Below, in pieces: positions 20,995 through 47,396 of a stretch of DNA of 63,286 bases. Position 1 is the stretch's first letter; every line of letters begins with the position of its first letter. The position numbers were made by a program, and so were the translations under genes. Source of the DNA: Octopus bimaculoides (lineage: Eukaryota); the NCBI RefSeq assembly GCF_001194135.2, contig NC_068998.1, positions 759,061 to 822,346 on the forward strand, in the 5' to 3' direction. The notes beneath the pieces are model-generated. The model was not told where the DNA came from, made no database searches, and saw only the letters and a list, made by a program, of their open reading frames with translations.

Positions 20995-21141
20995 AAGTAA
21001 GAGAGGTGTTCGACTTATTTGATTTCTGGGATGGTCGTGATGGAGATGTCGATGCTTACAAAGTGGGGGATCTGCTCCGGTGTTTGGGAATGAACCCAAC
21101 AAATGCACAGATTCACAAGCATGGCGGTACCAAGAAGATGG
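20995..21141 (+). CDS. MLE: ELC-A coding exon (EF-hand I, 147 nt)
   Basis: Acceptor tttacag at 20988-20994, donor GTCAGT at 21142; encodes (E)VREVFDLFDFWDGRDG...HGGTKKM(G). Confidence 0.95.
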
Positions 21142-21463
21142 GTCAGTATAACATCTATCTATCTAGCTATATGTGCATGCGTGGACATGCATGTATTCTA
21201 TGTATGTGTGTATATATATACATACATACATACATACAAACATATATANNNNNNNNNNNNNNNNNNNNNNNNNNNNNNNNNNNNNNNNNNNNNNNNNNNN
21301 NNNNNNNNNNNNNNNNNNNNNNNNNNNNNNNNNNNNNNNNNNNNNNNNNNNNNNNNNNNNNNNNNNNNNNNNNNNNNNNNNNNNNNNNNNNNNNNNNNNN
21401 NNNNNNNNNNNNNNNNNNNNNNNNNNNNNNNNNNNNNNNNNNNNNNNNNNNNNNNNNNNNNNN

Positions 21464-21510
<47 letters not shown>

Positions 21511-22521
21511 GGACAGCCAAGAGGTGCCGATGCCGACTACATAAACATCCTAACACAAATAACAAGAGCATGATACACGTTAGCAAGCTATGCTCGTCAG
21601 TGAGTGACGGCTGGCTGTACTTTAATCTTCTTAACACTTTTCAATCGTATCAGACTGCTATTTCTAGCAAGTTGGTTAAGCCCCAAACAGACTCGTTAGT
21701 TCTATTGTGATATTGCTCAGCTCTAAAAAAATTCTTTAATGTTCTTTAACACAATAATATGAAATGTTAATTGCATTATTTTTGGTTTACCTGACAGGTG
21801 AGAAATCTTACAAACTGGAAGAAATCTTGCCAATCTATGAAGAAATGAGCTTGGAAAAAGATAAGGGTACAAACGCAGACTTTATGGAGGCATTCAAAAC
21901 CTTTGACAGAGAGGGTCAAGGTTTCATCTCATCGGCAGAAATGAGAAATGTACTTATGTCCTTGGGTAAGTAAATCTGTCTTGATCTGCATGTGTGGGTG
22001 TGTGTATGTGAGCGTGTGCGCGCGCGCGCGAGCGTGTGTGTGCGTGTGTGCGTGTGTGCGTGTGTGCGTGTGTGTATGTATGTGTGCGTATGTATGTGTG
22101 TATCTAAGTGAACGTATACGTAATGAGTTCATGGTATGTCTGCGTGCGTATGTATGTCTATGTATGCGTGTGCATCTGTACGTAAATGTATGTGTACGAA
22201 AGGAAGTGTTTGTAAGGATCTGCGTATGGGAGGGAGGGAGAGAGTATGTAGAGTATATGTAAGTGTGTGTGTGCGCACGCATGTACATGTGTATGTATGT
22301 ATGTATGTATGTATTATTCTGTTGACTGTTTTCCCGCCGCTGCTCAAACTAACTCTGCCCTCTTTTATTGGTTGCCGCGTCTCTACAGGAGAGAAAATCA
22401 CTGATGCACAAATGACTGAAATCACTCAGTTCTGTGATATCAGAGAAGACATCGATGGCAACATCAAATATGAAGGTAACTTCTTTGATTTCAATACAAC
22501 ACCCACATTATTCATTCTATC

Positions 22522-22618
<97 letters not shown>

Positions 22619-44670: not shown

Positions 44671-45807
44671 TAAATAGATAGATAGATATTAACATACCTC
44701 GATAAAGTATAAGTATTCTTAAAACCAGTAACGATCATGATAAGTTTATGCGCTAATTTAAATAAATAACTGAACACAATTAATGCTGGGGACATTATTA
44801 GATAGTTAATTATGTGCTCAGAAAAGAACGGCAATAACTCGAATTATATTTTGATCAATTTAACCATCATGGGAAATAACTCAGGTTGGATTTGAGTAGC
44901 AAAATCTGTCTATCTGCCTCTCTCAATCTCTCTCACTCTTTCTCTCTCACTCTTTCTCTCTCTATCCTACTTTCTCTTTCGGTATTAAAACTTAATACTG
45001 ACAAAGGCACCCGTTAATTGCAGTATGCTCCTGCCCCAACAAGTGCATCACTATAGCCTTGACTCTTAAGCACTAATAAATATGACGTGGCCCTGTTTAA
45101 CAATGAGGTGTCCTAGGTAATAAACTCAATGTGGTTCTGCTAACGTGACGCGAACTGTTGGCTTCGAAGTTCAAAAATCTTCAACATTCTCCACGACAAA
45201 AACAAGTTTGAATGAAATATTGACAAGAGTTATTCCCCTTGCTCTACCTCTACTGTTACTAACATAATCTTTCCAGTAATTCGTTTATTTCCGTATTTTT
45301 ATGACTGTCATTGTTTATTTCGGAGATGCACTTGCATAGCAAGTGACTTGAGTTGAGATCGTGTGCTGAAACGAAAACAATTGCAGCGCGGAAGATGTTT
45401 GTAAGCCGTTTAAGAACACACAAAAATCGTTGTCAAAATATTTTTGTCGCTTTGAGACTGCGACCTGTTCACTGACAAATTTTCGCGCTGCAACACGAAG
45501 CTTTGTCTGTTTCAAACGGCTTACAAACATCTTCCACGCTGCAATTGTCATTGTTTATTAGTTTTGTTTTTTTTAAAGGCAGGTGTGTAGTAGAATCGGT
45601 AGAGAGCCACATTGATTGCTTCGAGCTCCGTTGTTAATTTTACCATCGGTGATCATTGTTGGGAGCAGTAATCTAAACGACAGAGGATTATCAAGGTTTC
45701 CTGTTCTCTCGTTCTGAAAGTTCTAAGGACCCATCTGGCCAACCGGCTGCAATTTATTGTCAACTTAGTAATATGCACCTGGGAAAATACATCTAATTAG
45801 CTTGTAT

Positions 45808-45890
<83 letters not shown>

Positions 45891-47046
45891 AAAAAGAAGT
45901 TTGAAAACGCCACTATATAAAATAAATTTTAATTTATAATTTTCTCAGAGATATTTTACATGTTTCGGTTCTTGAAAAAACGAACCTTATCAAAAATACA
46001 TATTTAAAAAAAAATTGTAATTAAAAGAAAAGTTTATAATTGTTTCATACTGGTGTCAACATAGTCCACGTGGGAGCATTTTTTGTGTGGGGACATAATG
46101 GCTGTCTCGTGCGTTGACTTGAATCGTTGGTTGTAGTAGTAGAAGTGACCGTGTTGGTAATGGTAAACGGGAGTGACCTCCACACACAAAAAAATCGGTC
46201 CTACGTGGACTATGTTGACACCAATAAGAAACAATTATGAACTTTTCTTTTAATTACAATTTCTTTTTTAAATATGTATTTTTGATAAGGTTCCTTTTTT
46301 CAAGAACCGAAACATGTAAAATATCTCTGAGAAAATTATAAATTAAAATTTATTTTATATAGTGGCGTTTTCAAACACATATATACATATATATATCATA
46401 AGAAGGACTTAATTCCCACTTCCTGCACCAGAATACGATGTTTCGCTGCTCGAGAAACCTCAATTCAAGATCTTTTATTCCCACTGTCAGTGTAGCGTAG
46501 ACCAGGGTTTGTTTACTCACCACTTGTTGTTAGAATCTGACGAAGTTCGGCAACCGAAACATAACCTAATCCTTCTCGGTCGTGACTCTTGAAGGCTTCG
46601 ATGAAATCCTTAAATGTTCCAGTGTCTGTTTCCTTTTTCACCGATTCGAAGCAGGCCAAGAACTCGGCATACGTCAACTGCTTCTCTCCTACGAAAAAGA
46701 AAAAATACAAGAAAAAGAGGTATTTTTAAAGAAATATTCTGTGTTTTTTATTGAGTTTTGGGGAAGGTTCTGAGCCCATAGCCTTCGTAGGTTCTGTCAG
46801 AATGGTGACATGGAAGAAATGAACAAGTGTGGAGAAGAACCTCGACAGAGGGAAGACTCACATGAGTTTAAAATACAGGATGAATATGTAGCGGAGACTG
46901 ACAAAGGGTGGGAAGAATAGAAGAGGAAACGAGTTGGTGAAGTGCCTGAGGAGCACTGAGGGACGACCAATGGCCGAGGATCAGAAGGGTCCACAGGAGA
47001 ATGATCCAGAGGTGGGTGGGGTGGGGGCGAGGAAAGCATCAGAGAA

Positions 47047-47127
<81 letters not shown>

Positions 47128-47396
47128 GTGCTTTGATATGTGAATGTGTAGCTGTGCTTGTATATATATATGTGTAGATGTGTGTGTGAGAGAGTAAATG
47201 TGCATTTGAATGTATATGTACAGGTGTGTGTGTGTGATGTTCATCTTACCTGCTTTTTTGGTGCCGCCATGTTTCCTGGCCAATTCCTGTGTGGGATTGA
47301 GACCCACACAACGAAGTAAGTCTCCAACTTTAACAGCATCAATCAATCCGTCTCTGCCATCCCAGAAATCGAACAGATCGAACACATCCTGTACCT
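40386..47396 (-). CDS. Second, divergent myosin essential light chain, ELC-B; span of 4 identified coding exons, N-terminus not located
   Basis: Spliced translation EVQDVFDLFDFWDGRDGLIDAVKVGDLLRCVGLNPTQELARKHGGTKKAGEKQLTYAEFLACFESVKKETDTGTFKDFIEAFKSHDREGLGYVSVAELRQILTTSGERLLDREVNEIFQFTDLRENIDGNVKYEDFINGVLSGGKS*. GT-AG phase-1 introns at the same positions as ELC-A; no stops or frameshifts. Confidence 0.92.
40651..40862 (-). mobile_element. Full-length SINE, same family as 43926-44136
   Basis: GCACAAGGCC...GTCGATTAAATCGACCCCAG...GGATGAAAGGCAAAGTCGACCTC...TTTGAACTCAGAACG...GCTCGCC. Confidence 0.88.
43926..44136 (+). mobile_element. Full-length tRNA-derived SINE with 17-bp target-site duplication
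   Basis: GGCGAGCTGGCAGAA...GTCGACTTTGCC...GGCCTTGTCC; TATTATAGTCCTTCAGC duplicated at 43909-43925 and 44137-44153. Confidence 0.88.
44286..44400. repeat. ATCAATC-anchored array (15,15,19,19,19,19-nt periods)
   Basis: ATCAATC-like cores start at 44286, 44301, 44316, 44335, 44354, 44373, 44392. Confidence 0.7.
44427..44513 (-). CDS. ELC-B coding exon (87 nt)
   Basis: Acceptor ctttccaacag, donor GTAAGG; ERLLDREVNEIFQFTDLRENIDGNVKYE (not in ORF track). Confidence 0.93.
45320..45545. mobile_element. Short insertion with 14-bp TSD and internal 35-bp inverted repeat
   Basis: TGTCATTGTTTATT at 45306-45319 and 45546-45559; 45377-45411 is the reverse complement of 45514-45548 with 1 mismatch. Confidence 0.75.
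45952..45998 (-). ncRNA. Minimal type I hammerhead-like fold, U3-A8 core variant (left arm; on ELC-B sense strand)
   Basis: Mirror copy of 46277-46323 with loop II GUUUUUUCAA. Confidence 0.6.
46277..46323 (+). ncRNA. Minimal type I hammerhead-like fold, U3-A8 core variant (right arm of inverted repeat)
   Basis: UAUUU-UUGAUAA-GGUUC[CUUUUUUCAA]GAACC-GAA-ACAUGU-A-AAAUA. Confidence 0.6.
46521..46688 (-). CDS. ELC-B coding exon (168 nt)
   Basis: Acceptor ttttcgtag, donor GTGAGT; EKQLTYAEFLACFESV...AELRQILTTS. Confidence 0.94.
47250..47396 (-). CDS. ELC-B coding exon (147 nt, EF-hand I)
   Basis: Minus-strand acceptor ttctgcag, donor GTAAGA; same length as the ELC-A homologous exon; 37/50 aa identical by hand count. 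Confidence 0.94.

What the first reader, a model, noticed from the sequence alone, without database searches (positions are those of the whole stretch)
20995..47396. Tail-to-tail pair of myosin essential light chain genes, one a strongly diverged intact paralogue
Seen: two ELC genes converge about 17.5 kb apart with identical internal exon lengths (147/168/87 nt) and all phase-1 introns, but only about 84/146 aa identical by hand count. ELC-B has no stops or frameshifts. Known: molluscan myosin is regulated by Ca2+ binding to the ELC, and the well-studied scallop and squid muscles are described with a single ELC type. Inference: an old inverted duplication produced a second ELC that may serve a different myosin or muscle type (smooth, non-muscle or arm-specific).
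Basis: partly seen in the sequence, partly recalled or inferred. Interest (0 to 1): 0.75.

Follow-up and report, generated by a model that had tools for sequence, protein, structure and literature searches.

The report
Ancient convergent pair of myosin light-chain genes
The window (Octopus bimaculoides) holds two intact, convergently oriented myosin essential light chain genes that are already annotated, and the second copy belongs to an old, conserved, mollusc-wide paralogue group of unknown tissue role, so the finding is real but fairly ordinary.

Summary
ELC-A lies on the + strand and its last coding base is 22832. ELC-B lies on the - strand and its last coding base is 40386. The genes converge 17,553 bp apart. 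Both have internal exons of 147/168/87 nt, phase-1 introns and canonical splice sites, and the proteins are 85/146 identical.

The window is O. bimaculoides chromosome CM046618.1. Both genes are already RefSeq models (XP_014777418, XP_014777419). The assembly gaps inside the finding lie in an A intron or between the genes and break no exon. The layout is collinear with gap-free Argonauta and O. vulgaris sequence.

ELC-B is functional. A spliced mRNA from a close relative matches its exon junctions, dN/dS is 0.09 (the same as ELC-A), and the Ca2+-site loop FDFWDGRDG is intact.

ELC-B is not a cephalopod novelty. It falls in a mollusc-only clade with gastropod and bivalve proteins (89% NJ bootstrap). 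That clade sits inside the scallop-type ELC family and away from non-muscle Mlc-c/MYL6-type light chains. The same tail-to-tail A/B pair exists in Argonauta and in the gastropod Gigantopelta, so the inverted duplication predates the cephalopod-gastropod-bivalve split.

Which myosin or tissue ELC-B serves remains untested. One squid skin proteome reports it.

The parts
9620..9734 (+). ELC-A first exon region: conserved promoter/5'UTR block ending in the start codon ATG (9732-9734), followed directly by the donor GTAAGT
   Evidence: 90.5% identical over 137 nt to the Argonauta A exon-1 region, which has the same ATG|GT structure
9961..10376 (.). Assembly gap that probably hides ELC-A's 28-nt second coding exon (SQLTKDEIE)
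   Evidence: In Argonauta this exon lies 580 bp downstream of the ATG exon. No such exon is found anywhere in the window. O. vulgaris/O. sinensis A starts MSQLTKDEIE, while all three O. bimaculoides models have aberrant N-termini
20995..21141 (+). ELC-A 147-nt exon (EF-hand I with the Ca2+-site loop FDFWDGRDG)
21798..21965 (+). ELC-A 168-nt exon
22389..22475 (+). ELC-A 87-nt exon
22783..22832 (+). ELC-A last coding exon (EFIKRVMSGPFPDGEK, stop TAA)
   Evidence: the Argonauta A C-terminus PFPDGEDKK agrees
22833..40385 (.). Intergenic spacer between the two 3' ends (17,553 bp, five assembly gaps, microsatellite-rich, no other gene detected)
   Evidence: a conserved block at 23910-24235 matches Argonauta; O. 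vulgaris is collinear from 32834 upward
39808..40423 (-). ELC-B last exon: coding part 40423-40386 (DFINGVLSGGKS, stop TAG) plus 3'UTR to at least 39808
   Evidence: transcript L011 aligns over 40425-39808 at 94.8%
44427..44513 (-). ELC-B 87-nt exon
46521..46688 (-). ELC-B 168-nt exon
47250..47396 (-). ELC-B 147-nt exon (EF-hand I with FDFWDGRDG)
47397..63286 (-). Part of ELC-B's first intron (about 21 kb in all). Exon 1 (MSTIDKDEV, 31 coding nt) lies about 5.2 kb beyond the window end
   Evidence: L001:10001-10031 holds exon 1, and L001 is 100% identical to the window

Best explanation
The locus holds two functional paralogous genes for scallop/squid-type myosin II essential light chains.

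ELC-A is the octopus orthologue of the classical squid mantle-muscle light chain LC-1.

ELC-B is the octopus member of a second, mollusc-wide ELC lineage. That lineage arose by an inverted (tail-to-tail) tandem duplication before cephalopods, gastropods and bivalves diverged, and it has been kept under purifying selection since.

Shown here: the gene structures, intactness, splicing, selective constraint, clade membership, and conserved convergent linkage in octopods and one gastropod.

Inferred: B keeps the ELC domain-I loop (F-D-F-W-D-G-R-D-G, including F20 and R24) that forms the triggering Ca2+ site in scallop myosin. It therefore most likely also sits on IQ1 of a myosin II heavy chain and takes part in Ca2+ switching. 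It probably does so in cells or with heavy-chain isoforms other than the bulk mantle/adductor myosin that biochemistry has sampled. This would be sub-functionalisation by expression, by partner, or both.
For: Identity of the genes:
- The window is O. bimaculoides CM046618.1.
- A is 100% identical to A0A0L8GX12 / XP_014777418 and about 80% to squid LC-1 3I5F_C (E 1e-77).
- B equals XP_014777419.1. Its PDB matches are squid ELC (E 3e-47) and scallop ELC (2e-46), against calmodulin and MYL at about 1e-18.

Function retained:
- Spliced mRNA L011 (SRR16213285, a close relative) matches all five B exon blocks at 95-100% with junctions at the predicted sites.
- dN/dS between Octopus and Argonauta is 0.088 for B and 0.089 for A.
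- The Ca2+ loop is unchanged in B. Its role is described in PMC4914028.

Phylogeny (NJ):
- The scallop-type ELC clade has 97% bootstrap.
- The B-type clade has 82-89%. It contains cephalopods, gastropods (Gigantopelta, Haliotis, Nucella, Elysia, Bradybaena) and bivalves (Solemya, Tegillarca, Argopecten, Mytilus, Saccostrea).

Gene structure and synteny:
- B exon structure 31/147/168/87/38-47 nt with a 20-37 kb first intron is identical in O. vulgaris, Argonauta and Gigantopelta.
- The A/B pair is convergent in Argonauta, 12.4 kb apart.
- It is convergent in Gigantopelta, 6.6-8.3 kb apart.
- The O. vulgaris A and B proteins have consecutive accessions on one chromosome.

Protein-level hint: A0A0L8GWE3 (B) was identified with 3 unique peptides and 13 PSMs in Dosidicus skin, against 2 peptides and 6 PSMs for LC-1 (PMC7024357).
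Against: - No expression, binding or Ca2+ data for ELC-B exist in what I could search, so the functional part is inference from sequence.
- The trees are NJ on 156 columns. Relationships among the A-type, classical bivalve and non-mollusc ELCs are unresolved (bootstrap below 65%), so the exact node of the duplication is not fixed.
- No A-type gene lies within 10 kb downstream of the B-type gene in Haliotis rubra, Sepia pharaonis, Argopecten or Solemya. Larger distances could not be inspected, except in Solemya, where the candidate A-type gene is 30 Mb away on the same chromosome.
- B-type proteins lack the conserved C-terminal AGP(F/Y)PD tail. Most also lack Pro70, and all have Ser for the otherwise invariant Thr92. 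These changes could alter heavy-chain contacts.
Confidence: 0.8

Rival explanations
1. ELC-B is the essential light chain of non-muscle (cytoplasmic) myosin II. It would be the molluscan functional counterpart of Drosophila Mlc-c or vertebrate MYL6, recruited from the muscle-type family.
For: B is conserved across molluscs, while purified muscle myosins show one ELC. The B-type protein was found in squid skin. B has a very long first intron and twice the synonymous divergence of A (dS 0.97 against 0.48), which fits lower, broader expression.
Against: B is nested in the scallop-type clade (97%) and is separate from Mlc-c/MYL6-type proteins. A distinct 'myosin-2 essential light chain' family exists in lophotrochozoans that also carry scallop-type ELCs: Clonorchis and Paragonimus. 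[quoted passage not shown] B keeps the Ca2+ loop with the FW insertion that Mlc-c/MYL6 lack. I could not confirm an Mlc-c-type gene in Octopus itself (one search listed no named molluscs).
Confidence: 0.12
2. ELC-B is a redundant or decaying duplicate, or a light chain re-used by an unconventional myosin or a non-myosin target, and no longer works as a myosin II ELC.
For: B has lost the conserved C-terminal AGPFPD tail and changed Pro70 and Thr92. Octopus B has His in place of Phe in FK(S)FDREG.
Against: The ORF is intact and a spliced mRNA exists. dN/dS is 0.09. Orthologues have been retained in three molluscan classes for over 500 million years. Peptides have been detected. All of this excludes decay. 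A change of partner cannot be excluded by sequence alone.
Confidence: 0.05
3. The convergent arrangement or the second copy is an assembly artefact of a gap-rich scaffold.
For: There are fifteen N runs in the window, five of them between the genes.
Against: The same order and orientation are seen in gap-free Argonauta sequence. O. vulgaris is collinear across B and 7.5 kb of the spacer, including two of the gaps. The copies are only 51-65% identical in nucleotides per exon, so they cannot be collapsed or duplicated haplotypes.
Confidence: 0.01

Closest known systems
[quoted passage not shown]
   Same: ELC-A is its octopus orthologue: about 80% identity, E 1e-77, and a 100%-bootstrap clade. ELC-B has the same length class, the same Ca2+ loop and the same exon phases.
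   Different: ELC-B is only about 56-58% identical and falls in a different mollusc-wide clade. Its C-terminus ends DFINGVLSGGKS instead of ..VMAGPFPDKSD.
Scallop striated adductor ELC (Argopecten irradians P07291; PDB 1B7T/1SCM), the Ca2+-binding light chain of regulated molluscan myosin
   Same: Both octopus proteins keep F-D-F-W-D-G-R-D-G, including F20 and R24, which shape the Ca2+ site together with RLC G117 (PMC4914028). B scores E 2e-46 against it.
   Different: The classical scallop ELC is not in the B-type clade. Scallops carry their own B-type gene ('myosin, essential light chain, adductor muscle-like', XP_069103590.1, XP_021347379.1).
Molluscan 'myosin, essential light chain, adductor muscle-like' / 'Sulfhydryl light chain' automatic annotations (C. 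gigas XP_011441922.1/K1QGG6, Mytilus, Pecten, Gigantopelta XP_041350766.1)
   Same: These are the orthologues of ELC-B: the 89% clade, the shared GRDGLIDA and FKSFDREG signatures, and the same 31/147/168/87 exon plan where I checked it.
   Different: None has a published functional study that I could find. The names are transferred from Swiss-Prot best hits and say nothing about tissue.
Muscle versus non-muscle ELC gene pairs in other phyla (Drosophila Mlc1 / Mlc-c; vertebrate MYL1/3/4 / MYL6)
   Same: It is the same idea: paralogous ELCs dividing the work among myosin II isoforms or tissues.
   Different: This is an independent duplication inside the lophotrochozoan muscle-type family. Brunet et al. 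2016 (PMC5167519) date the vertebrate ELC split to the vertebrate stem. The Mlc-c-type family is a separate, third lineage.

Membership tests
Scallop/squid-type (Ca2+-binding) myosin II essential light chain | Calmodulin-like protein of about 150-160 aa with paired EF-hand domains | tested here: met
   Pfam EF-hand_7 and EF-hand_6 score above their cut-offs for both B (P0122) and A-type (P0493). Both align end to end with solved ELC chains.
Scallop/squid-type (Ca2+-binding) myosin II essential light chain | Domain-I loop F-D-F-W-D-G-R-D-G with F20 and R24 (scallop numbering), which forms the triggering Ca2+ site | tested here: met
   The loop is identical in A, B and all B-type orthologues. 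It is absent (2-residue deletion, different residues) in Mlc-c and MYL6. Its role is taken from PMC4914028.
Scallop/squid-type (Ca2+-binding) myosin II essential light chain | Groups with solved molluscan ELCs rather than with calmodulin, MYL6 or Mlc-c | tested here: met
   PDB search: B gives 1e-47 to 1e-45 against squid and scallop ELC, and 1e-18 against calmodulin and MYL3. The NJ clade of lophotrochozoan ELCs has 97% bootstrap.
Scallop/squid-type (Ca2+-binding) myosin II essential light chain | Binds IQ1 of a myosin II heavy chain and, with the RLC, binds Ca2+ | not testable with these tools
   This needs recombinant regulatory-domain reconstitution and Ca2+-binding assays.
Scallop/squid-type (Ca2+-binding) myosin II essential light chain | Conserved C-terminal ..KVMAGP(F/Y)PD tail, Pro70 and Thr92 | tested here: not met
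   This applies to B only. B has Ser at position 92 (100% of B-type, 0% of the others), Ala/Ser at position 70 in 73%, and a tail ending ..NGVLSGGKS. These are conserved features of the classical proteins, not known functional requirements.
Non-muscle myosin-2 essential light chain (Mlc-c / MYL6 type) | Orthology with Mlc-c/MYL6-type proteins | tested here: not met
   B lies outside the group containing Drosophila Mlc-c, human MYL6 and the bryozoan, flatworm and mite 'myosin-2 ELC' proteins.
Pseudogene / decaying duplicate | Stops, frameshifts, lost splice sites or relaxed constraint (dN/dS near 1) | tested here: not met
   The ORF is intact with canonical splice sites, a spliced mRNA exists, and dN/dS is 0.088.

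The most novel reading that the evidence does not exclude
The B-type ELC marks a second, so far unstudied Ca2+-regulated myosin II system present in all conchiferan molluscs. It might be used by non-mantle, non-adductor contractile cells such as skin/chromatophore, visceral or vascular muscle. On this reading, the 500-million-year retention of the tail-to-tail A/B pair reflects shared or mutually exclusive regulation through the common 3' intergenic region.
Probability: 0.2. Interest if true: 0.5.

Novelty: new member of a known kind. Interest (0 to 1): 0.3.

Why it matters
Molluscan myosin is the textbook case of thick-filament regulation by direct Ca2+ binding to the essential light chain. 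All of that biochemistry rests on one ELC type from scallop adductor and squid mantle.

Every sampled class of shelled mollusc keeps a second, constrained ELC with an intact Ca2+ loop. This means part of the regulated-myosin repertoire has never been examined, and it gives a defined gene to test. The questions are which tissue expresses it, which heavy chain it pairs with, and whether its Ca2+ sensitivity differs.

The conserved convergent gene pair is also a small example of microsynteny that survived the heavy genome rearrangement of coleoid cephalopods.

The genes are already annotated and belong to a well-known family, so the result refines existing knowledge and is not a surprise.

Tried and rejected
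- Start-codon exons. Regex and degenerate searches for an ATG-containing first exon of A or B in the window found nothing. The reason: B's exon 1 lies outside the window, A's ATG is alone at the end of its exon 1, and A's next 28-nt exon is probably in a gap.
- An Mlc-c-type light chain in Octopus. I tried to show that Octopus also has one. The representative search plus cluster names yielded bryozoan, flatworm and mite 'myosin-2 ELC' proteins. A profile search built from them listed arthropods, flatworms and unnamed sequences but no named mollusc. For molluscs this point therefore rests on RefSeq names quoted in papers.
[quoted passage not shown] The gene mentioned in PMC12551290 (LOC105320997) turned out, in that paper's own table, to be a regulatory light chain. 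It says nothing about the B-type.
- Apparent repeats in B's first intron. I first read the off-diagonal matches as repeated 1-kb units. A self-comparison showed no such repeats. The matches were the O. vulgaris locus, which was in the same query file.
- Synteny elsewhere. Look-ups in Haliotis, Sepia, Argopecten and Solemya showed no A-type gene within the 10-kb flanks. This is inconclusive, not negative.
- Literature. Searches for the transcript's run accession and for gene or protein accessions returned only the squid skin proteome. Its peptide tables are not held.
Squid ELC, scallop ELC, human MYL6, Drosophila Mlc-c and calmodulin were used only as probes and outgroups. The squid sequence agreed with the aligned stretch (residues 10-157) of the PDB alignment.
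Full report
**What the window is.** A locus fetched through the exact ELC-B protein (XP_014777419.1) is 100% identical to the window. It places the window on Octopus bimaculoides chromosome CM046618.1 (GCA_001194135.2), at about 759,061-822,346. The window has fifteen N runs. It is AT-rich and microsatellite-rich. Apart from the two light-chain genes it holds no convincing ORF and no tRNA.

**The observation.** A tblastn probe with squid ELC found two sets of exons. 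I refined the exon boundaries by eye and by script.
- ELC-A (+): 20995-21141, 21798-21965, 22389-22475, 22783-22832.
- ELC-B (-): 47396-47250, 46688-46521, 44513-44427, 40423-40386.
- The internal exons are 147/168/87 nt in both genes. All introns are phase 1. Every boundary has AG...GT.
- The two proteins share 85 of 146 aligned residues. Nucleotide identity per exon is only 51-65%.
- The coding ends face each other 17,553 bp apart.

**The gaps.**
- Gap 21249-21463 is inside an A intron. The intron is 656 nt here and 668 nt in gap-free Argonauta. The protein aligns without interruption to squid ELC 3I5F_C across that junction.
- The other five gaps named in the finding are intergenic. O. vulgaris bridges 36022-36549 and 37309-37899 with about 360 bp each.
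- B has no gap between its second and last exons.
- Order and orientation of the whole locus are the same in gap-free Argonauta sequence. This covers the A promoter block, the A exons, a conserved block just past A's 3' end, and the B exons. The arrangement is not a scaffolding artefact.

**Both genes are longer than the finding.**
- B's first exon (MSTIDKDEV, 31 coding nt) lies about 21 kb upstream of exon 2, roughly 5.2 kb past the window end.
- A's start codon forms the last three bases of its first exon (AAAATG|GTAAGT, window 9732-9734). It sits in a block that is 90.5% identical to Argonauta.
- In Argonauta a 28-nt exon (SQLTKDEIE) follows 580 bp later. In the window that position falls in gap 9961-10376, and the exon is found nowhere else.
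- This explains why all three O. bimaculoides models of A have wrong N-termini: 155 aa starting MFVFT, read out of the intron, plus 229-aa and 256-aa models. The O. vulgaris/O. sinensis protein starts MSQLTKDEIE.

**What the proteins are.**
- Both are scallop/squid-type myosin II essential light chains.
- A is 100% identical to A0A0L8GX12 / XP_014777418 and about 80% identical to squid LC-1 (E 1e-77).
- B matches squid and scallop ELC structures at E 1e-47 to 1e-45, against about 1e-18 for calmodulin and vertebrate MYL3.
- Both have EF-hand pair domains.
- The domain-I loop F-D-F-W-D-G-R-D-G is unchanged in B and in all its orthologues. It includes F20 and R24, which together with RLC G117 create the triggering Ca2+ site of scallop myosin (PMC4914028). 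Mlc-c and MYL6 lack the FW insertion.

**Is B functional?**
- A 1,228-nt transcript assembly from a very close relative (Logan SRR16213285) carries the contiguous 156-codon ORF. It aligns to the O. bimaculoides genome in five blocks at 95-100%, with junctions exactly at the predicted splice sites and a 3'UTR reaching window 39808.
- Nei-Gojobori dN/dS between O. bimaculoides and Argonauta is 0.088 for B (dS 0.97) and 0.089 for A (dS 0.48).
- The O. bimaculoides/O. vulgaris value of 0.46 rests on only eight substitutions and carries no weight.
- Orthologous transcripts are frequent in decapodiform assemblies: 114 contigs carry one sequence.
- A jumbo squid skin proteome reports the O. bimaculoides B entry A0A0L8GWE3 with 3 unique peptides and 13 PSMs, next to LC-1 with 2 peptides and 6 PSMs (PMC7024357). 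The peptide lists were not available.

**How old is the duplication?**
- B's best non-cephalopod hit is a gastropod protein (Gigantopelta, 72%). That is more than its 58% identity to its own neighbour A.
- In NJ trees (Kimura distance, 156 columns, 500-1000 bootstraps) the lophotrochozoan scallop-type ELCs form a 97% clade. That clade is separate from Mlc-c/MYL6-type proteins.
- Within it, a mollusc-only B-type clade has 82-89% support. It unites cephalopod B with proteins from gastropods (Gigantopelta, Haliotis, Nucella, Elysia, Bradybaena) and bivalves (Solemya, Tegillarca, Argopecten, Mytilus, Saccostrea).
- Cephalopod A groups with squid LC-1 at 100% and, weakly, with gastropod A-type proteins.
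- The B-type genes of O. vulgaris, Argonauta and Gigantopelta share the exon plan 31/147/168/87/38-47 nt and a 20-37 kb first intron.
- B-type signatures are Leu-Ile after GRDG, Ser for the otherwise invariant Thr92, frequent loss of Pro70, and loss of the AGP(F/Y)PD tail.

**Synteny.**
- In Argonauta, A (+) ends at 3,807,704 and B (-) ends at 3,820,129 on the same contig. They are convergent and 12.4 kb apart.
- In the gastropod Gigantopelta aegis, the B-type gene is followed 6.6-8.3 kb downstream by a convergent A-type gene. That gene's 87-nt exon and last exon match XP_041350782.
- In O. vulgaris the two proteins have consecutive accessions on one chromosome.
- Each Gigantopelta copy groups with its cephalopod counterpart and not with its neighbour. 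The tail-to-tail layout is therefore inherited from before the cephalopod-gastropod split.
- No A-type gene lies within 10 kb of the B-type gene in Haliotis rubra, Sepia pharaonis, Argopecten or Solemya. In Solemya a candidate A-type gene is 30 Mb away on the same chromosome.

**Is B the non-muscle ELC?**
- By descent, no. It is nested in the muscle-type family.
- A separate 'myosin-2 essential light chain' family exists in lophotrochozoans that also have scallop-type ELCs, namely Clonorchis and Paragonimus; a bryozoan (Watersipora) also carries the myosin-2 type.
- RefSeq proteins of that name are reported from Pomacea and from Dreissena haemocytes. The name also occurs in a paper on eastern oyster larvae that I found but did not read.
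- I could not show such a gene in Octopus itself. A non-muscle role for B by recruitment therefore remains a minor rival.

**Comparison with what is known.**
- Both genes, and B-type orthologues in scallops, oysters, mussels and snails, already carry automatic names. [quoted passage not shown]
- I found no paper that distinguishes the two lineages or studies the B-type.
- Brunet et al. 2016 place ELC paralogue splits in the vertebrate stem. The molluscan split is an independent event.

**Verdict.** The suggested specialised role is plausible but untested. This is an uncharacterised but already annotated member of a well-known family. Interest is modest.

Noticed in passing
window 9620-10376 and 20978-20994: All public O. 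bimaculoides models of ELC-A have wrong N-termini: XP_014777418.2 starts MFVFT, read from intron sequence just upstream of 20995, and older models have 229 and 256 aa. The true 28-nt exon (SQLTKDEIE) is probably lost in assembly gap 9961-10376. The real start codon is at 9732-9734.
   Followed up: yes
window 9732-9736; L009:10001-10005: ELC-A's start codon forms the last three bases of its first exon (ATG|GT), so an intron follows the ATG directly. This is conserved in Argonauta. ELC-B has no intron there (31 coding nt in exon 1), so the two paralogues differ by one intron.
   Followed up: partly
window 9128-9210, 9620-9752 and 23910-24235: Non-coding blocks are conserved with Argonauta at 87%, 90.5% and 73%, although dS is about 0.5-1. 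The first two lie upstream of or in A's first exon (a likely promoter/5'UTR). The third lies about 1.1 kb past A's stop codon (3'UTR or a downstream element).
   Followed up: no
ELC-A versus ELC-B coding sequences: Synonymous divergence between Octopus and Argonauta is twice as high in B (0.97) as in A (0.48), at equal dN/dS. This could reflect stronger codon-usage constraint on a very highly expressed A gene.
   Followed up: no
L003:60384-63772 (Gigantopelta aegis): The gastropod A-type gene has two alternative last exons, giving isoforms X1 (..EFISKVLAGPYPDDK) and X2 (..EFITKVMAGPFDK). No second last exon was found for octopus A in the window.
   Followed up: partly
L007 and L008 (Argonauta hians contigs 8 and 45): The identical Argonauta B protein is encoded on two contigs, with different intron lengths (exon-4 position differs by about 1.7 kb). 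A partial A-type protein is also on contig 45. This is probably an uncollapsed haplotype or a recent segmental duplication of the whole pair.
   Followed up: no
15 hit P0068: A scallop-type ELC (157 aa, 63-72% identical to the octopus proteins) is deposited in NCBI as 'EF-hand domain-containing protein [Clostridium perfringens]'. This is almost certainly animal contamination of a bacterial assembly.
   Followed up: no
window gap edges (e.g. 4541-5170, 6261-6950, 17337-18117, 24193-24825, 35921-36686): Nearly every assembly gap is flanked by TA, CA or CT microsatellites. The gaps are therefore unresolved simple repeats and not missing unique sequence. Where O. vulgaris spans them, they are shorter than the N runs suggest.
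   Followed up: partly
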